Of a DNA stretch of 64,000 bases, positions 9,941 through 32,700 are shown piece after piece (within the stretch, counting starts at the first letter, position 1; each line of letters opens with the position of its first letter). The notes below the pieces were generated by a model. That model did not search any database. It was not told the origin of the DNA and saw nothing but the letters and a program-made list of their open reading frames with translations. The stretch comes from Podarcis erhardii (taxonomy: Eukaryota), in assembly GCA_964252035.1 (NCBI GenBank), contig OZ176205.1; one strand, written 5' to 3'. The position numbers were made by a program, and so were the translations under genes.

Positions 9941-10065
9941 ATGCTGGTAAGGTGAACATTGACCAGCATCCCATACAGATCTGTGTGTTGGTTCTAAAAG
10001 AAAACCAGTGCTCACCCCAGATCTAAAAGCACAGAACCCATCAGTCTGCCCTCACACAATCTCAC

Positions 10066-10328
10066 TGTTAAGTTGTGGGTGAACATATCAGACGACACAG
10101 CGATTCTTCAACAGCTCTTGTTTATTCACAGGCCAGAACAGAACTGAACTGAAGGGTTCAGCCAGCCTGCTTATGTAGAGCTCCACTACAACGCAAGAGT
10201 AACAACTTTCTGTAACTATCCAATCACTGAACGTCACTTTCAATCCCTTATTTACATATGTGGACCTGAGTGAAAACTATCTACAGTATCCCCCTGCTGG
10301 CCCAGGGTGAGAACTTCAGTATATAACA
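10066..10328 (-). mobile_element. Solo LTR (263 bp), probably Gypsy class
   Basis: TGTTA...TAACA termini and a perfect 5-bp TSD CTCAC (10061-10065, 10329-10333). Minus strand has a TATA-like box (ctacataag) and AATAAA (10121-10126) in the expected order. Confidence 0.9.
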
Positions 10329-11848
10329 CTCACCTTCCATCATTTATGCAGCCAGAGGAGCCAACCTCACTTTGCTCTCTACCTCCTGTTCTGGATGTGA
10401 CTTTCAGCGAAGCCCTCTGCCTTCCCACTGCACCTCTGCACTTTTCACTGTACTGTGGACTGTTTCAAAACACCCTGTGCTAGAGAGCTGGTCATTGTGC
10501 CTGACCTCTATGTGGGGTTCAGTCCTACTGCATACAAACGTGCAGCAGAATTCCCTGAAATAAATCCTCTGCTGTGTCTCTCTGCAAGAGTCACTGCTCT
10601 AGACTTGTCTCTTTCCTGTCACGCCCATGGTCCTTACATTTCCAGGCTCTAATGTTTGCCTCCAGTCTTTGTTGAGGAAAAAAAAATGTGTGCTGAACCT
10701 AGAAGCTGCATTTTGTAACACAATCTCCTATATTTATAAACTGGAGGCAGTACAGTAATTCATGCCCCTGTGCTAGGAGCTAGCCTAGAATGGATGTTGA
10801 CTCTTCCATTCTAACTCTACCATTTCAAAATGGAAGTGGACACTGATCCAGGCCATTGACAATTCCATTGCCTTACACCATCCAGTTGTCTTCTCAAATA
10901 AAGCATTGCCTTCCTACTGAGTCAGGAAGAAGCCTTTGGGAGCTTTTGGGCCATCTTGACTTGTTTGCATGAGTTCACAGCACAAGACTTTCCCCACCCC
11001 ACCCCCTTGTAAATTGGGAGAGTGCCAAGTTTTCATTAAACCTCTTATAAACTCAGAGCTCCTGCAAGGCTCCATATGGCAAAGAAGCCATCTGTGATTC
11101 ATATAGTCTTGCTCCAACAAAACGACAACAGTGTGAAAAACTCTTTTCTCTGGTTGGCAGTGAACTGTAAAAGTAATGTTAGTAATAGCTTCTGCAGGCT
11201 CGGGAATGACATAATTGACATTGGCTTATGGCACGAGCATTAGCTGCAAACTCTTGCCAAAAGTTCTGGATTGATTAATATCTTCATTTAAAAGCGTAGA
11301 TCGTAATGGTCAAGGGCCTTCTTAGCGTTAGCTTTCTTTTGGAGCAAGGGAATTTCTAGGTTGCTGTAGATGGACAGTGTCTTTTTTTTTTTAAAAAAAA
11401 AAAAAATCATTCTATTTGTTCCCCATATTGCTGATCTCTTGCACTGCAAGAACCCATTTGCTTTATCCATAAACAGGGCTTGTGTTTCTAATTGTTTTGA
11501 AACCTTATTGCCAGGCCTACCTCTCAGTCGTATCTGTAGCACTTGACCCAATGTCTGCTGTTTAATACAGAGCTGTAGCAAAAAATAATAATACTGGGCC
11601 TGGAGCCATGTCCACATATGTTTCTTGGATGTCTGATATTTTCATTTTGCTTCAGATGCCCTGAACTTGGAGGAGTGTCCATTTATAGCGTCCATGATCT
11701 TTCCAGAGGGCTGTGCTTTCACCCTCATCCCATCTTTTCTCCCCTCCAACCAACTCTGCAAATGCAGAGCTCAGAAGCAGAGACCTACATTTAATTTTAA
11801 CAAATGAGTAAGGGAGACTGATCTCTTTAAAAAATATTCATGCTTGGA

Positions 11849-11882
11849 GGCAGGAAAGATGGAGAAGGGAGGGAGGGGGAGG

Positions 11883-11920
<38 letters not shown>
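11849..11920. repeat. Purine-rich tract ending in (GA)~16
   Basis: Direct reading. Confidence 0.95.
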
Positions 11921-11923
<3 letters not shown>

Positions 11924-12485
11924 TTTCCCAATCCCTTTGAATTTGAAAGTTTGAGGTCTTTGTTTTTTAGAATTTCTTGCTGTGCAATTTAAATATCTCA
12001 ATGGGACCATAGAGCATGGAAAGGCTGCCTGCTTACTGAAGCAAATGTTTAGAAAAACAACACATAAGAACAGCAAGGCTTCCTTTCCCACCTCTCCTAG
12101 TCTACTGTTTTTATAGATAGGCTGAGCTGAACTGCAGAAGCATTTCATAGTTTGTTTAGATAAGTAAGTGGCAAAACAAATTGGACCAGCTCCTAGAGGC
12201 TTTACACATGTTTTGGCCTTTTTCTCTCCCCCCCCCCTTCTTCTTCTTTTTTTTAAACCCAGATGTCACCAGGAATTTCCCCAAAGAAATGGAAAGAGTA
12301 AAAGCAAGTGTGCCATTGGAATAAAGGCTGACAGGTTTCCATTTAGGGGCAGTTTGCATGTTGCCCTAGAAAGTGACTCCTCGACTTGGGCTTCTTTCTA
12401 CAGCAAAGTGGATTTGTTTTCCTGACCAGTATGTATGTTTTGAACCACCGGATCTGATTGGCTGCTTTACTTTGGCTCGTTTATA

Positions 12486-12687
12486 CAGTGGTACCTTGGG
12501 TTACAGACGCTTCAGGTTACAGACTCTGCTATCCCAGAAATAGTACCTCGGCTTAAGAACTTTGCTTGAGGATGAGAACAGAAATCGTGCGGCGGCGGCA
12601 CAGCGGGAGGCCCCATTAGCTAAAGTGGTACTTCAGGTTAAGAATGGACCTCCAGAATGAATTAAGTTCTTAACTGAAGTACCACTG
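12486..12687. mobile_element. Tc1/mariner-superfamily (Tigger/pogo-like) MITE
   Basis: TA|CAGTGGTACC ... GTACCACTG|TA; repeated internal ggttaaga/ggttacaga motifs. Confidence 0.9.
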
Positions 12688-13366
12688 TACTCGTTTACAA
12701 AATTGTAGTGACTTTAGTTGCCGTGAAATCACATAGGAACTCAGGAGATTGTAAGTCATTCATGAGCGCTGAGAATTCAGTTAACTACCCTTAACTAGAA
12801 TTTCCAGGATACCCTTGAGAGGAGTTGTGAGTTTTTTGAAACTGATTTACATATATGGCTTTGACCCTGATCTCAGTTTATGGTGCACCGTAATGAGTGT
12901 GATATGAACTAAAATGTATGTGTTGCTGGGAGACTTTTCTCCCCTTGCTACATGAGTCATCCAGCGTGTTCTGCTCATGGATTCTGTGATTTCAGCACAC
13001 AAAGGATGAATCTGTTGTTCTCAATAGCATGCATAGGATATCTGCTGTGCAAACATATTCTTTAAATTCATTTGTTCTTTGGTAATTTTCTTCAATAGTC
13101 CAGTTGAGTTTGGAGAACCAGAGTGTACTTGATTTTTCTTTCTTATGTTTGGGGTATCAGAACTTCCAGGTTAGATAAGTATGGTCATTAGTGGACTTGT
13201 TGTAAAGATCTGTTCTCCATGAATATAAGAACATCAAGCAAAGAGATGTGTGGATTTTCAGTGGTGCTACTGAATGTAAGCTTGATTGGGGAATGAATAA
13301 CGTTGATGAAATATTTAAATTGATCTAAGCTGCCTTTCTCATCTGGAGATTCCTTAGGGAAATTCT

Positions 13367-26480: not shown

Positions 26481-27639
26481 ATAAGCATGAGCCCCCATAG
26501 CATCAGCTGTCGATAGACTCCAGGAACTTAGCCTCACTGACCCCATGTGCCCCTTCCCACACTCCACCATGATCCAGTTTCTTTTCCAGTAGGTTACTTT
26601 GCACTCTCCTTGATCTAGTGCCAGTATCAAGCACCTGAGTCCTTGAGACTTTCCCCCTACATTCCAGAGAATCTGATAATGTCTCCCGGAAGATGTTAAA
26701 TGCTGCTGGCACCTACTCTGATAAACTTGCGTGCGCTATTCCCCTGAAACTTGTAAACAGTCCTTCTCCCACCACCCGGTCTTGCTATCCTATACCTCTC
26801 CCAGCATTGAAAAAGGTGTTTGTTTTGACTTGGAGGTGATAAATCCCCAGGAATAAACCTAACGCAGCCCAACAGTTCTTTATTTAATTTCTCCTTCCAC
26901 TGCGAAAGCCCTGAGAATAACTACCATTTCCTGCTGAAGAAGGAAGCAGTGTTTTCCTCGACTGTTATAAATATTACTTCCTTGCTTATATGTTTCCCAG
27001 TAATGGAAACAGGAGAAGAAATCTTCCCAGCCATAAAGTTTGTTGGCTAAAAAAAAAAAAAATTAAACCAAACTACGCCCAGCTTCCTTTCGACAAATCT
27101 GGAATGTTTATGGGAAATGGGAGACCGAGGTGTAACCACCTCAGTCCATATAGCCATGTGTGTGGTCAAGCAATATAAATAGGAGGAGCATAATGTGGCA
27201 AAACTTAGTGGCCACAAATATCCACTGAAATCTATGGGATAAAAATTAGTCACAATTATGCCTCTTGCCATTGCTGGATTTGGGTATGAAGGTTCCATCA
27301 GAGCAAACTCATTAGGTCACTGAGAAGATGATAATGCTGTGATGTGTTCATTTGGCTGTCAATTTTGATTTCTCCCAAAATTTTGCTTTCTCTTTTTTCC
27401 ACTCTTAAGTTCATTTCCATGTCAGTTCACTTTTTTTTTTAAGTCTTCACAAACATTTATCCTCATATGCACATTTTTCTATGCAATCCAAAAGACACAT
27501 TTTTGCAAAAGATTTCTATCCCATGTAATGTGTATTATGTGATTTCTGCAAATATATGCATTTTTAATGCACATTGCTTGGCTGGAAAACTGCATTGCAA
27601 AATTCAAAGAAGTGCAAATTTCAAAGGATGGCTATGTCC

Positions 27640-27803
27640 CAATTCATCCTGGAGGGAAAGCGACAAGTGGGGTGTCACAGGGTTCAGGGTTCTAGCCTGG
27701 GCCTGTTGTTGTTCAACATCTTTATAAACGATTCGGGTGAAGGAATTGAGGGGATGCTCATCAAATTTGCAGATAACACCAAACTGAGAGGGGCAGCTAA
27801 TGC
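27640..27803 (+). mobile_element. CR1 LINE reverse-transcriptase fragment
   Basis: Translates to QGSSLGLLLFNIFINDSGEGIEGMLIKFADNTKLRGAAN, matching the CR1 FADDTKL motif. Confidence 0.88.
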
Positions 27804-27874
27804 CTTGTTTCAGAAAGTGCAAATTATGTTGGTTTGCCTTTAAATGGGGACTGGATCAAATTTCTCCTCCATTC

Positions 27875-29730
27875 ACTTTTGGCGACTTCCGGGTTAGCGC
27901 GAACGGCTAATGGCGGATTCCCTCCGAGCTCCGGAGGGAATCGGCTCTACTGAAGACGGGTCTTGCCGTGCCAGCGAAACGGGGACCCTCAGAAACCGCA
28001 GGCGCGGAAGCCTGCGGACTTGGTGACTCGGTGGGTACCTTAAGCGCCCTCCCCGACCCACGAAGAGCCTTTTTAAAGGCTGCGGAGAGGGTACGGAGAG
28101 TGGCGTGGTGCTGAGAGTAGACCGCTACTTCAGTGGAGTGAAGCCGCAAGCCATGGCCGGAGAGCGCTGACTTTCTTCCCAAAATTTGGACTGGATAACA
28201 AAGGACCCGTGAGTAGTGGAATTTGGACTTTAAAAATTTTATCCTGTGAATTCGGCACGATCGGGGGATGTGTTAAAGGGAAGTCCGCACCCCCTCTACT
28301 TATAGACGATTTAAAGCAAGGAACGGAGAATTAAGGCGGAATGAATACTGTTTTGATGATTTAAAAGTTTTTCACAAATTTGATAGAAGAAGATTTTGTG
28401 CTGGAGAGAAAGGGAATTTTGGAACTTTGTGTGTAATCCCCCCCAAAAACCCGGGAGTGTCCTATTTGGGTGCCGGAGGAAGAAGTGAAAGGAGTTTGAC
28501 AGCTGTCAAAGAAGCTGTCAAACGGGCGGACAAAGTAAAGAATTTTGTTATTTAACAACTCTTGGAATTAAAGCTGATACATTTGGACTGAGGCGATTGG
28601 AAACAAAGTATTGATAATAACAAAGTAACAGATTATTGGAAAAGGACTACTAAATAACTGAAAGCCCCCTAGGGGGAATTAGTGACATTACAATGGCTGC
28701 AGAGGGAAAATTACTGGCGGAGATAGAAAAAATGTTCTTTCTCGTGGGAATCCTGCAGGAGCAGAGTATGGCTCTGAGTAAAGTTTTTATGACCTTGAAT
28801 TCTGAAACAAACAACTCTGCTGAATGCACAAAGGAGACGCATGATAAAAACTCTGCAGCTGAGCAGGAAGAGATGCCTTTGGAATTGACAGAGAAGAAAG
28901 AAGGAGTTCAGACACTACAAGTGGAAAATATCAACCAGGAATCTGCATTGTTAGAGTATGAGCAAGAAGACCTTTGGATTACAAACCTGCGAAAGATGAG
29001 AAAGAAGAAGAGAGAAGTCCCTGGAGTACTTGGAATATTAAAACTAAAAAGAATAAAGCAACGTGATTGGGACTTTCCTCTTGAGTATGGAAAACTAGAT
29101 GGTCTTTCGCAGCAAACACTCTTTAACATTCTGGATGAAAGAAAATATGATGTGACTCTGACTGAACTCCTTCGGGGTCTTAGGACCAACAAAGAGGATT
29201 ACCAACATAGTTGGCAGAGAGGGACTGACAGAGAATCAGACGCCTCGGACGTGAGGAATCCGGGCTAAGAACTATTTTTTGTTTGTTTTTTGGACATTTG
29301 TCTGGGAAGGGACAGAAACCGGGGCAGGGGGGGAGAGAATAGAACTATAAAATGTTATGTTTTGTTTTACTTGGTCAATGTGACCTATAATTAATATAAT
29401 AAAGGGAAAATTTGTGGAGGGGAAGTTAGATCGACCTTAAAAAAAAAGAAATTAATGATTATAAGAGAATTGGATAAGTTGAATATAGATAAACAAAAAG
29501 AATTTAATTTTTAAAAACAATATGAATATCTTTAAGAGGTTAGGTAAGAACTTGCTGAATTAATTTTGGAACTGGGATGTAAGAGGAGGGGGTGGGGGGA
29601 AGTCAATGAAAGTGGGTAAATAAAATTAGGGTATGTAATTGTATTTGTGTGTTTGTGTGTTTTTGTCTTTGTGTGTGTGTTTGTTGTTATAAAATGTAAA
29701 AACCCAATAAAAATTATTTAAAAAAAAAAA
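27875..29730 (+). mobile_element. Intact non-autonomous L1-type retroelement (1856 bp)
   Basis: Perfect 18-bp TSD caaatttctcctccattc (27857-27874, 29731-29748); CpG-rich 5' end; G-rich tracts, GT-rich stretch, AATAAA and poly(A) at the 3' end; no endonuclease or RT coding capacity. Confidence 0.9.
28693..29268 (+). CDS. 191-aa ORF inside the L1-type element; function unknown, possibly a divergent ORF1-like protein
   Basis: Uninterrupted ORF with a strong Kozak context (acaATGG), acidic Glu-rich middle and basic RKMRKKKR cluster. It is the longest ORF in the track. No family recognised. Confidence 0.5.
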   Translation: MAAEGKLLAEIEKMFFLVGILQEQSMALSKVFMTLNSETNNSAECTKETHDKNSAAEQEEMPLELTEKKEGVQTLQVENINQESALLEYEQEDLWITNLRKMRKKKREVPGVLGILKLKRIKQRDWDFPLEYGKLDGLSQQTLFNILDERKYDVTLTELLRGLRTNKEDYQHSWQRGTDRESDASDVRNPG

Positions 29731-32700
29731 CAAATTTCTCCTCCATTCCTAGCCGTGTGTTTTGCATTACCCCCTCCCCCCCCCAAAAAAATATTGTGGA
29801 ATGCAGGTAACAATGCATTTTGCAAAGCCTTGTTCTATTGGAAAAGGAGGCCATTCCAGGGAGGTTATCTCTCCTGAGTTGGTGAGAACCATCCTGGCTT
29901 ATTAGATTGTATCTTAACTTGTAAGGGCACTGGAAACTTGCAGAGACAGCTTTCAAATAATTCCAGGACAAAAGCCAAAACATGGTGCTTTCTCCCAAAA
30001 TGGTTTCTCTTCCAAGCAGGCCAGCCTAAGGTACATAGCGTTCAGTGCATTTAAAAATCAAATATATGTTACATAATTTTGGATTACTCCAAGAAAAGTC
30101 TCTGTTTACTACATTACCTCATTTGACAGAAGAACCTTTCCCAGCCCTCTGAAATGCAGTTCCCTCATGACATTTGGAAACTTTCCATCTTTGGTATGAT
30201 GCTATTTGTTTTTCACTTTAAAAAGAAAAGAAAAGTCTGTCTATTTCCCTTGTAGTATTTTTCTTTCACCCTCCTCCTCCTGCTTTAACACAAGGAATTC
30301 TGTGACATTGATCAAGTTTTATGGCACATTTGCATTAAAATCAAAATCAGGCTTGTCTTGAATGACTCTCTTCTGTGATCTTCAGATGCTGAAAAGAAAA
30401 GAGGGAAGAAGAAGAAAAGATTCCGGATTTAACTCCTAACCCCATGGCTCAGGGGTTGTTCTATGTGCTCCACTGATCTAGGGAAAGCAACATGTAGTTT
30501 CTTCCTGAAATCCAATTACAGCACATCCAGTTAGATCTGGCAGTACTGAAGGAAAGCAAAGTGGAGGGGGAGGCTGCTTCCTGCTAGGACAGAGATGCAA
30601 CTCAAACAAATTTCTAAGTGGAATCCTAAACATAGTTGCAAGGAAGTAACACCCAGTGAACTCAATGGAGCTTAGGACGGGATTCACTTAATAAAAACCA
30701 TCAGCAGAAGCACTGCTCAGGGACTTCCACTTGCAAAACAGGGCTTTACCCACTCTACATGTCCCATGTCCACCCCCAACAATTGAATATGGGGGCTCAG
30801 GAGAACCCAAAGTGCAATGCATGGGGTAGGAGAGGGGGAATCGTTCCACGGCCGTCATTCCACAACATTGAATCCCACCGTTAGTTCTGAGTAAACAAAC
30901 ATGTTTTGGATCGAACTGGAAGTATAGCCCTATTCACTCATTTAGGAATTGGGAAAATCAGCTCATGGGGGACCATGTGCTAACTCCCCCACCCCATCCC
31001 TCTTGTAAGCTGAAGGGTGGCTGCACAGAGCGAGCAATGTAGAACCCTGTGAAATTAGTCTGGTAGTTTGCTGAAGTGGATGTTGTGATCCTATTGATCC
31101 TGTTTATGATGACACCATCTTTTATTGTAACATTGCCTTGAGAAAATATTTGATTTTGAAAGGCAACAGACAGAATGATTAAATAATCTGTAAGAGAGAG
31201 AGAAGTGTTTCTGTGCTTGCTTGCATTCATCTCTAGTCACCATTGCTCCTTCCTTTCTTCCTCTCCCTTTATCTTGTCTTGGTTCAAATTTAAACTCATT
31301 GGATCACGGACATCTTGGGAGAACTCACAGCCCCACAGAAAGCAAGAAAGAGTTGAGTTGAAATGCAGTTCAGAAAACAAACACATTGTTCCATAATTTC
31401 TATGGGATGACGTAGAAATTAAGTAACACTGACAAATACAAAAATGGTTTTGGAGTAAAATGCACACCGGTGGGTGATATTATTAAAAGCAACCACTGTG
31501 CTCCATTAGCTTTCAGTGTTAGCAGCATGAGTCTTGCAGCTGATGAAGAAACATCTAGAAACACAATGTTCAGTTTCATAACACCCTTAATTAAACTTAT
31601 TCTTGCTTTCTCTTCTGGGTACATATGTTTTTGCTTACTAATTATAATGATATACTGTCAAAATAACATAAATATTTAGACTGCCTTGGTGTACTAGAAA
31701 CCTATATGCTGCTTCATGGTAATATGAGCTCAACCAGTCTGAGGCTTTCCAGGTTGTTCATTGCATCAATTTAATGCTTTCTTAACTTCCAGACGCACAA
31801 CATTTTTATCAGGTCTTCCATTACAACCACTGTGTGGTCACTGTGAGATTGACAACATGGGACAAATGTGGATTTGACTGCAAAATCCACCTAACAGCAG
31901 TTGGGATTAGCAGCTGAGATCCCAATATTGAAAATCACTCCCCACCTTTTTACAAATCCCAAATCTTCTTTATGCTTCTGTTAATTTTTGCTTAATCCGA
32001 TACCCCTACACAGGAAGAAACACAGCACACAACAAAACCCAAACTACAAATCTCATGTTATAAACTATCTCCAACGCCAATCTGAGAACTCTCCACAACC
32101 ATGTTTTAAACTGTGCTGTGTGACTAATCTTGTTCTCCCATACTTCTATTGTTTCTTGTTAAAAGAATAAATTGGATTGATCTTGATCTCTGATAAAATA
32201 TAAAGTGGTTTGAAGAGAAAATGTACAGCTTATCGATATGTTTGTGTGTCACTGAAAAGATGCCTTCAGCATATATTTCTATAGATTTCTTTTTTCAAGA
32301 ATTAAAGTTCTTTACCATTGTTCCAAAGGTCCTAGCAGCAGGAACAACCACTTTGTGTTACTTTCATAATGCCTCCTTTCATTTTCAGCAAGTGGACACA
32401 GAAAAGAATCCCAGAGATATTTAAACATGTGCTTCTGGGCTGATACGAAATCAGTCCATTTGACCTTGCATGACTTGCCCTCACTGGAAGTAGCTTTCCA
32501 GGGTCATGGGCAGAGGTGTGTCCTAGAACCTGCTCACCTGACCCTTAATACTGATAAAACTAGTGGCTGAACTTCTGACCTGCAGGCATAACATGTGCTC
32601 TGTCACTGAGCTGTTTCTGCTCTTTAGTGAAACTTGTGATTATGTGGTTGTGCAAGCATAGGGTCAGGAACTGCCTGGGCAACATTGCAGTGTGTGAGGC

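What the first reader, a model, noticed from the sequence alone, without database searches (positions are those of the whole stretch)
27875..29730. Intact, young non-autonomous L1-type retroelement carrying a single unrecognised 191-aa ORF
Seen: a perfect 18-bp TSD, a CpG-rich 5' region with little decay, ~820 bp of leader, one open 576-bp ORF with a strong Kozak context, then a G-rich/GT-rich 3'UTR, AATAAA and poly(A). There is no ORF2. Established: HAL1 (half-L1) elements encode only an ORF1p and are mobilised in trans by L1. Inference: this is either a HAL1-like family with a very divergent, short ORF1, or an L1-mobilised vehicle for a different protein. I cannot see the RRM (RRxNLRxxGxPE-like) or C-terminal domain of canonical ORF1p. 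The protein has an acidic coiled-coil-like stretch followed by a basic NLS-like patch (RKMRKKKR). A multi-copy, ORF-conserving parasite of L1 would be a distinct system.
Basis: partly seen in the sequence, partly recalled or inferred. Interest (0 to 1): 0.8.

Follow-up and report, generated by a model that had tools for sequence, protein, structure and literature searches.

The report
Abundant lizard retroposon with its own small protein
This is a young, complete copy of a very abundant 1.86-kb lizard jumping gene that has no copying enzyme of its own, was almost certainly pasted in by LINE-1 machinery, and carries a small conserved protein that shows no detectable likeness to LINE-1's own proteins.

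Summary
An 1856-bp element (27875-29730) lies between perfect 18-bp target-site duplications. It has a CpG-rich, strongly folded 5' end, an 818-nt leader, one 191-aa ORF, a G-rich and GT-rich 3'UTR, AATAAA and an 11-A tail.

It is not a one-off. In the source species, contigs pile up on it at thousands of times the single-copy flank depth. A sister species about 2.4% diverged has the empty site.

The ORF belongs to a small protein family of 15 full-length members, 171-215 aa and 20-75% identical. All share the same N-terminal helix and the same tail (A-S-D-V/L-R/I-N/D/S-P-G-stop), which argues for long-term coding constraint.

No search linked the ORF to L1 ORF1p, ORF2p or any host gene. I tried Pfam on all members, a profile search of 1.84 billion proteins, a PDB profile search, the ESM Atlas and two structure predictions.

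Best reading: a HAL1-like, L1-dependent coding retroposon whose protein is not recognisably ORF1p. Dependence on L1, and the protein's role, are inferred.

The scan had already flagged what is probably the same 1.85-1.9-kb family elsewhere in this genome (s1-220626, s1-224437, s1-217724). I could not reproduce that follow-up's "shrunken ORF1" reading.

The parts
27857..27874 (.). Left target-site duplication (18 bp)
   Evidence: Identical to 29731-29748 (family D9). It lies inside an older, very abundant repeat. The consensus of that repeat's other copies runs straight through the junction (loose end at 27846).
27875..29730 (+). Whole non-autonomous poly(A) retroposon, 1856 bp
   Evidence: It is bounded by the TSD. 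Summed contig word depth is 250,000-690,000 across the whole element, against about 100 in the flanks of the source species. A 835-nt single-copy contig from organism D joins 27874 to the downstream flank without the element (record 27).
27875..28330 (+). CpG-rich, strongly structured 5' module (presumed internal promoter)
   Evidence: CpG o/e is 1.09 and 0.93. Positions 27875-28180 fold at -150.9 kcal/mol, z = -5.2, and 0 of 100 shuffles fold as well. The module is also highly repeated in organisms B and D, where the ORF body is much rarer. No Rfam family matches, so it is not a SINE-type head. CTTCCGG (27886-27892) and ATGGCGG (27910-27916) are motif-level leads only.
27875..28692 (+). 818-nt leader with five upstream ATGs
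   Evidence: the uATGs lie at 27910, 28153 (GCCATGG context, 5 codons), 28268, 28341 and 28356, and all open short ORFs.
28452..28572 (+). Leader block conserved in related species (two CAGCTG/AGCTGTCAAA repeats)
   Evidence: this bin stays at about 10,000-13,000 word depth in organisms B and D at 80% likeness or more, while neighbouring bins fall to 7-530. The sequence was read.
28693..29268 (+). 191-aa ORF (stop included), family-specific protein
   Evidence: Found. Fifteen full-length homologues of 171-215 aa share its N-terminus and its tail. It has no Pfam, PDB or Atlas match. The ten best-supported indel variants among copies all lie outside it (table 4).
29269..29719 (+). 3'UTR: G4-like tract 29304-29333, internal AATAAA and A9 at 29398-29447, GT-rich tract 29631-29690, terminal AATAAA 29706-29711
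   Evidence: (family D1).
29720..29730 (+). Poly(A) tail, 11 A
29731..29748 (.). Right target-site duplication (18 bp)
   Evidence: family D9.

Best explanation
This is a recent, full-length insertion of a high-copy, non-autonomous poly(A) retroposon of a lizard.

The proposed mechanism is as follows. The element is transcribed from its own CpG-rich, structured 5' module. The transcript is polyadenylated at its own AATAAA. It is then copied into the genome by target-primed reverse transcription, using the ORF2 protein of a resident LINE-1 in trans. That route leaves a poly(A) tail and an 18-bp target-site duplication.

Unlike SINEs or processed pseudogenes, the element keeps one small ORF of 171-215 aa across the family, and the product is under long-term constraint. 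The protein has three recognisable parts:
- an N-terminal amphipathic helix with a 3-4 heptad pattern;
- an acidic middle followed by a basic patch (residues 99-123);
- a near-invariant C-terminal tail ending in PG-stop.

I infer that the protein acts in cis on its own RNA. It would assemble or mark the RNP on the polysome and so help the RNA capture L1 ORF2p. This is the role ORF1p plays for HAL1 and L1, but here without detectable ORF1p domains.

**Shown:** the anatomy, the copy number, the youth of the insertion, the empty site, the conservation of the protein family, and the absence of recognisable domains.
**Inferred:** L1 as the driver, the internal promoter, and the protein's role.
For: - **Integration hallmarks:** a perfect 18-bp TSD, an 11-A tail and AATAAA 8 nt upstream of the tail. 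The nick site reads TTTG/AT on the bottom strand, a variant of the L1 endonuclease site TTTT/AA (plus my own knowledge of the consensus).
- **Copy number:** in organism A the flank word depth is about 100 and the element's is 250,000-690,000, roughly even from 5' to 3'. About 4,760 contigs are 95% alike or more, against about 1,100 in organisms B and D.
- **Youth:** a single-copy contig from organism D bridges the site without the element. Flank divergence is about 2.4% (38 of 1570 letters), and about 3.1% for organism B (table 8). CpG o/e at the 5' end is about 1.
- **Coding constraint:**
  - 15 full-length homologues, 20-75% identical to one another, all 171-215 aa, share an M-A-A-x-G-K...L-V-G-x-L-Q start and an A-S-D-V/L-R/I-N/D/S-P-G-stop end.
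  - In organisms B and D the nucleotide stretches encoding the N-terminus (28694-28814) and the C-terminus (29178-29298) stay 80% alike or more, while the middle does not.
  - None of the 10 best-supported indel variants inside the element falls in the ORF, which is 31% of its length (table 4).
- **Not a SINE head:** no Rfam match.
- **Structured 5' end:** z = -5.2.
- **Protein shape:** the N-terminal helix 2-45 is the only confidently modelled part, at pLDDT 72-86.
Against: - No autonomous L1 sharing the 5' or 3' ends could be examined, so L1 derivation and L1 dependence rest on hallmarks only.
- The protein is acidic overall (pI 5.1). That is unlike basic RNA-chaperone ORF1 proteins.
- Most of the protein is predicted with low confidence and no RRM-like sheet (mean pLDDT 47-48).
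- Self-association of the N-terminal helix got no verdict.
- No RNA run holding the element was found, so transcription and translation are not shown.
- Summed word depth is not a calibrated copy number; the tool itself warns of this.
Confidence: 0.7

Rival explanations
1. True half-L1 (HAL1-type). The element arose from a lizard L1 by loss of ORF2. On this reading the 191-aa ORF is a shortened, fast-evolving remnant of L1 ORF1: the N-terminal and coiled-coil part, with the RRM and CTD lost.
For: - The architecture matches HAL1: promoter-like 5'UTR, one ORF, G-rich 3'UTR, poly(A).
- The N-terminal helix has a heptad pattern (L7, I11, M14, V18, L21, L28, F32, L35).
- A basic patch follows it.
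- ORF1p coiled coils evolve too fast for profile methods to detect (my own knowledge).
- Earlier follow-ups in this genome read similar elements as 'mini-ORF1' (s1-220626, s1-224438). These are unchecked leads, not evidence.
Against: - None of 16 family members hits Transposase_22 or any L1 ORF1 Pfam model, even at E up to 10.
- The family profile finds no ORF1p or ORF2p among 1.84 billion representatives, and none in the PDB, where L1 ORF1p structures are deposited.
- Word searches with the N-terminal 50 residues and the C-terminal 47 residues return only family members or nothing.
- No beta-sheet is predicted.
- The pI is 5.1.
Confidence: 0.25
2. Non-coding L1 parasite. Here the ORF is incidental. 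The conservation at the two ends of the ORF would reflect RNA-level or DNA-level cis elements rather than a protein.
For: - The most conserved stretches are short blocks at the ORF ends and one in the leader (28452-28572), all seen at nucleotide level in other species.
- The middle of the protein is poorly conserved and predicted disordered.
- A non-coding 1.7-kb L1 parasite was noted elsewhere in this genome (s1-259098; unchecked).
Against: - Fifteen lineages down to 20-30% amino-acid identity all keep an open frame of the same length, with all length differences in frame. Neutral drift to that divergence would scatter stops and frameshifts.
- Well-supported indel variants avoid the ORF.
- No special pairing exists between the two conserved ORF ends; 98 of 300 shuffles pair as well.
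Confidence: 0.06
3. Processed retrocopy of a host mRNA that encodes a small unannotated protein, that is, an ordinary retropseudogene or retrogene.
For: The element looks like an mRNA copy, with a CpG-island-like 5' end, a CDS, a 3'UTR, AATAAA, poly(A) and a TSD.
Against: - There are thousands of copy-equivalents with even 5'-to-3' coverage, and a species-specific burst.
- No host protein related to it was found. All relatives are small, Logan-only and unnamed, and none comes from annotated genomes.
Confidence: 0.03

Closest known systems
HAL1 (half-L1) of mammals (Smit 1999; Bao and Jurka 2010, as cited in PMC5753468)
   Same: It is a non-autonomous derivative type that has one ORF and no ORF2, and it uses L1-type poly(A)/TSD integration. 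It forms a multi-copy family, and its ORF is kept open over time.
   Different: The HAL1 ORF is a recognisable L1 ORF1p. This ORF is 191 aa, acidic, and has no Transposase_22, RRM or CTD signal. The host is a lizard, and my literature searches found no description of such a family there. L1 derivation of the ends was not tested.
L1 ORF1p
   Same: Both have an N-terminal helix with heptad spacing followed by a basic stretch, and both occupy the first (here the only) ORF of a poly(A) retroelement.
   Different: There is no RRM and no CTD. The pI is 5.1 rather than strongly basic, the protein is about half the usual length, and no sequence or profile similarity was detected.
Non-coding L1-dependent retroposons (Alu and other SINEs, SVA, processed pseudogenes)
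   Same: They are mobilised in trans and share the poly(A) tail and TSD.
   Different: This element has no Pol III-type head. It is also the only one of these to carry a conserved protein-coding ORF.
2A-like recoding peptides of non-LTR retrotransposons (PMC3708506)
   Same: The family's tail ends in ...D-V-R-N-P-G, which superficially recalls -GD[V/I]ExNPG|P-.
   Different: The tail is one residue short between V and N. It lacks the key E, the leading G and the following P, since a stop codon follows. N varies to D or S within the family. The paper finds 2A-like sequences at N-termini, in the Rex1, Crack, L2, L2A, CR1 and Ingi clades, not in L1.

Membership tests
HAL1 / half-L1 | No ORF2 (no endonuclease or reverse transcriptase) | tested here: met
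   The 191-aa ORF is the only long ORF on the + strand of the 1856 bp, and it has no RT or EN Pfam hit.
HAL1 / half-L1 | The single ORF is a homologue of L1 ORF1p | tested here: not met
   Pfam on 16 members at E up to 10 gave no L1 ORF1 model. The profile search of 1.84 billion proteins returned only the small family. The PDB profile search gave no ORF1p. A truncated coiled-coil-only remnant cannot be excluded by these methods.
HAL1 / half-L1 | 5' and 3' ends derived from an autonomous L1 family of the same genome | not testable with these tools
   No related sequence lies elsewhere in the window.
HAL1 / half-L1 | L1-type integration: poly(A) tail, long TSD, A/T-rich nick site | tested here: met
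   An 18-bp perfect TSD, an 11-A tail, AATAAA, and a nick site TTTG/AT.
HAL1 / half-L1 | Multi-copy family rather than a one-off deletion | tested here: met
   Word depth is about 2,500-6,900 times the flank depth in organism A, and even along the element.
L1 ORF1p (Transposase_22) | RRM plus C-terminal domain | tested here: not met
   The models are all-helical with no strands, though at low confidence.
L1 ORF1p (Transposase_22) | Trimerising coiled coil | tested here: inconclusive
   Residues 2-45 form a helix with a heptad pattern at pLDDT 72-86. The three-copy complex prediction gave no verdict.
Processed pseudogene / retrogene | Low copy number, with an intron-bearing parent gene that encodes the protein | tested here: not met
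   There are thousands of copy-equivalents, and no annotated host protein is related.
SINE | Head derived from tRNA, 7SL or 5S RNA | tested here: not met
   Rfam at E up to 1 gave only a chance lncRNA hit inside the ORF.
2A-like recoding peptide | Motif -GD[V/I]ExNPG followed by P | tested here: not met
   The tail is A-S-D-V-R-N-P-G-stop, with the wrong spacing and no P. The motif is as given in PMC3708506.

The most novel reading that the evidence does not exclude
The ORF is not a decayed ORF1 at all. On this reading it is an independently acquired 'hijacker' protein, specific to a lineage of lizard retroposons. It lets their RNA out-compete L1's own RNA for ORF2p. Its near-invariant ...ASDVRNPG-stop tail would act at or just after translation termination, for example by holding the RNP at the ribosome where ORF2p can be captured. 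That would make this a coding parasite of L1 with its own machinery, able to burst to thousands of copies within one species.
Probability: 0.2. Interest if true: 0.8.

Novelty: new variant of a known kind. Interest (0 to 1): 0.58.

Why it matters
Non-autonomous partners of L1 are usually non-coding (SINEs, SVA), or they carry a recognisable ORF1 (mammalian HAL1). This family keeps a small protein of no recognisable kind over deep divergence, and it expanded to thousands of copies in one species since that species split from a sister about 2-3% diverged. That raises a testable question about what, besides a poly(A) tail, an RNA needs in order to capture L1's reverse transcriptase. The family is also a strong, recent source of insertional variation between closely related lizards, and so a useful marker system.

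Tried and rejected
**Searches for relatives of the ORF that returned nothing useful**
- Pfam on the ORF and on all 16 family members.
- ESM Atlas: no usable hit.
- PDB profile search: only chance hits, neuroguidin and IsdA.
- The weak 1336-aa hit of the profile search is an fn3-repeat protein and is spurious.

**The 'ORF2 tip' lead from earlier notes (s1-254825, s1-263167)**
- A word search with residues 145-191 found nothing.
- The profile search found no ORF2p.
- The lead is not supported for this ORF.

**Shared N-terminus with an L1 ORF1p**
- A search with residues 1-50 returned only family members.

**Structure and self-association**
- Two AlphaFold runs gave mean pLDDT 47-48. I ran no fold search, because such models give meaningless matches.
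- The homotrimer test of residues 1-60 gave no verdict and counts neither way.

**RNA-level ideas**
- Long-range pairing between the two conserved ORF ends is no better than in shuffles.
- Rfam finds no small-RNA head.
- The 2A-like reading of the tail was rejected on spacing and on the missing P.

**Attempts to obtain DNA of relatives**
- Because of this, no dN/dS could be computed.

**Literature**
- Searches for a described lizard half-L1 or ORF-bearing L1 parasite found none.
- Bao and Jurka 2010 is not held.

**Other points**
- No consensus of copies was built.

Full report
**What is there**

The sequence shows an 1856-bp insertion at 27875-29730. It is flanked by a perfect 18-bp direct repeat, CAAATTTCTCCTCCATTC, at 27857-27874 and 29731-29748. 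From 5' to 3' it contains:

- a GC-rich 5' region that is not depleted in CpG. CpG observed/expected is 1.09 and 0.93 in the first two 200-bp blocks, against 0.33 or less in the flanks;
- an 818-nt leader with five short upstream ORFs;
- a 191-aa ORF at 28693-29268 with the start context ACAATGG;
- a 3'UTR with a G4-like G tract (29304-29333), an internal AATAAA plus A9 (29398-29447) and a GT-rich tract (29631-29690);
- a terminal AATAAA (29706-29711) and 11 A.

There is no second ORF and no reverse-transcriptase or endonuclease signal. The first 306 nt fold far better than shuffled sequence (-150.9 kcal/mol, z = -5.2). They match no Rfam family, so this is not a SINE-type head. An ORF this long arises in 7 of 1000 dinucleotide shuffles. 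That is suggestive on its own but not decisive.

**It is a real, recent insertion**

Contigs of four public runs were laid on 27000-30600.

- In organism D, one 835-nt contig at single-copy depth covers 27745-27874. After 34 letters of low-complexity sequence it continues at 29788-30472. This is the empty site with one copy of the 18-mer.
- The flanks of organism D differ from the window by about 2.4% (38 of 1570 letters), and those of organism B by about 3.1%. The insertion is therefore younger than the split between very close species.
- A second, independent line comes from the older repeat that hosts the insertion. The consensus of that repeat's other copies reads ...ACTGAATCAAATTTCTCCCCCATCCCT, straight across the junction (loose end at 27846).
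- The undecayed CpGs agree with this youth.

**It is a high-copy family, with a burst in the source species**

In organism A the single-copy flanks have a word depth of about 100. Every bin of the element has 250,000-690,000, with no 5' truncation gradient. The tool warns that summed depth is not a copy number, so I take this only as 'of the order of thousands of copy-equivalents, mostly full length'.

About 4,760 contigs are 95% alike or more in organism A, against about 1,100 in organisms B and D, and much of that belongs to the flanking older repeat.

In organisms B and D the 5' 450 bp or so is still very abundant, at about 1,200 and 4,000 times flank depth. The body of the element is rarer by orders of magnitude, except for three blocks that stay 80% alike or more:

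- a leader block (28452-28572);
- the stretch encoding the N-terminus (28694-28814);
- the stretch encoding the C-terminus (29178-29298).

I draw two conclusions. The 5' module is shared with other abundant elements. And organisms B and D hold diverged relatives, while this particular subfamily expanded in organism A after the split. Twelve organism labels from eleven studies hold at least 7% of the element's 31-mers.

**The ORF is a conserved protein family of its own**

A word search of 5.8 billion proteins found seven full-length relatives, 39-51% identical and 188-214 aa long. All come from Logan assemblies and none is named. A profile search of 1.84 billion representatives added more, giving 15 full-length members of 171-215 aa plus one fragment, and nothing else credible. 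The single other hit is an fn3-repeat protein.

Members are 20-75% identical to one another apart from one near-identical pair at 94% (P0005 and P0007). All share three things:

- the same start, M-A-A-x-G-K...F-x-L-V-G-x-L-Q-E;
- a conserved block, K-D-Y-Q-Q-N-R-R-R-G-T-E-R-D-L;
- a near-invariant end, A-S-D-V/L-R/I-N/D/S-P-G-stop.

Column conservation is 0.7-0.75 at the N-terminus, 0.38-0.5 in the middle and 0.66-1.0 at the C-terminus.

Keeping an open frame of constant length and constant ends at such divergence is not expected without selection on coding. This is an inference.

One weak supporting observation comes from the copies themselves. None of the ten best-supported indel variants inside the element lies in the ORF, which is 31% of its length (table 4). 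The chance probability is about 0.02, but it is confounded by homopolymer runs in the UTRs.

In some members the ORF starts 12 codons earlier (M-A-I-P-L-G-G-T-S-D-I-T-M...). The window copy keeps the homologous P-L-G-G-I-S-D-I-T upstream of its ATG but lacks that earlier start codon.

**What the protein is not**

| Test | Result |
|---|---|
| Pfam on all 16 members, E up to 10 | no family, no Transposase_22 or other L1 ORF1 model |
| PDB profile search | no L1 ORF1p |
| ESM Atlas | no usable hit |
| Word search, N-terminal 50 residues | family members only |
| Word search, C-terminal 47 residues | nothing |
| Profile search for ORF2p | none found |

Earlier notes on this genome describe other half-L1-like elements whose ORF runs into the last ~45 codons of ORF2. 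I tested that lead for this ORF and found no support.

AlphaFold2 with 8 and with 16 sequences gives mean pLDDT 47-48. Only helix 2-45 is confident (72-86), and no strands are predicted. I therefore ran no fold search.

The protein is acidic overall (pI 5.1), with one basic patch at residues 99-123.

The N-terminal helix has 3-4 spacing of hydrophobic residues (L7, I11, M14, V18, L21, L28, F32, L35). A three-copy complex prediction of residues 1-60 returned no verdict.

The tail recalls the 2A motif -GD[V/I]ExNPG|P- (PMC3708506). It fails that motif on spacing, on the key E and on the missing P. Within the family the N also varies.

**Most likely mechanism**

The element looks like a self-transcribing RNA with an internal, CpG-rich 5' promoter module. 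It ends in its own poly(A) signal and is inserted by L1 ORF2p in trans. The evidence for that route is the TSD length, the poly(A) tail and the nick site TTTG/AT. L1 as the driver is an inference from established L1 biology.

The protein probably works in cis on its own RNA. The conserved N-terminal helix would provide self-association. The basic patch would provide RNA binding or nuclear import. The invariant tail would serve an interaction still to be found. Functionally this is what ORF1p does for L1 and HAL1.

I put 0.7 on the overall picture: an L1-dependent, coding, non-autonomous family under constraint. I put roughly 0.35 on this specific role for the protein.

The main rival, at 0.25, is that the ORF is a shortened, unrecognisably diverged ORF1, which would make this a true half-L1. 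A purely non-coding parasite (0.06) and a host retrocopy (0.03) fit the data poorly.

**Relation to earlier notes of this scan**

The scan has found this kind before on other DNA of the same genome. s1-220626 (1902 bp, followed up as 'half-L1 retroposon with mini-ORF1'), s1-224437 (1881 bp) and s1-217724 (1849 bp) are probably the same family, judging by size and description. I could not compare sequences.

My results agree with s1-220626 on youth, completeness, the lack of ORF2 and a protein kept by selection. I could not reproduce its view that the protein looks like a shrunken ORF1p, since every test available here was negative.

**Novelty and limits**

The kind is known: an L1-dependent non-autonomous element with a single ORF. 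The variant is not. It sits in a lizard, it is very abundant and recently expanded, and its conserved protein has no detectable ORF1p domains. Literature searches found no description, but Repbase and Dfam could not be queried, so a catalogued consensus may exist.

Expression is not shown, because no RNA run holding the element was listed.

Noticed in passing
window:27484-27846: The older repeat that hosts the insertion is itself extremely abundant in organisms A, B and D, at word depth 50,000-330,000 against 27-100 in single-copy flanks. In many of its other copies about 170-200 bp (roughly 27606-27805) is replaced by only 11-38 other letters. In the window this stretch encodes a CR1-like RT fragment (...LLFNIFINDSGEGIEGMLIKFADNTKL...). 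The window copy therefore looks like a composite or a longer variant (tables 5 and 5c).
   Followed up: no
window:29398-29447: Inside the 3'UTR there is an internal AATAAA followed by a 9-A run whose length varies among copies (an extra A in 17 contigs). The last 280 bp or so may be a second 3' module added to an older end.
   Followed up: no
window:28452-28572: This leader block contains GACAGCTGTCAAAGAAGCTGTCAAAC, two AGCTGTCAAA repeats with one full CAGCTG E-box-like core. It is the best-conserved non-coding part of the element in the sister species, where a 3-bp deletion at 28509 is the majority form in organism D.
   Followed up: no
window:27886-27916: The motifs CTTCCGG (ETS-like, 27886-27892) and ATGGCGG (YY1-core-like, 27910-27916) lie within 42 nt of the element's first base. 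This recalls the YY1 site near the start of the human L1 5'UTR. The comparison is from memory and was not tested.
   Followed up: no
window:27047-27066: A 14-A run lies about 800 bp upstream of the element and may be the tail of another poly(A) retroposon. Its boundaries were not examined.
   Followed up: no
window:28657-28692: The 12 codons upstream of the ATG are homologous to the N-terminal extension M-A-I-P-L-G-G-T-S-D-I-T of family members P0004-P0007. In the window copy they lack a start codon and follow an in-frame TAA. The family therefore uses two alternative start positions.
   Followed up: partly
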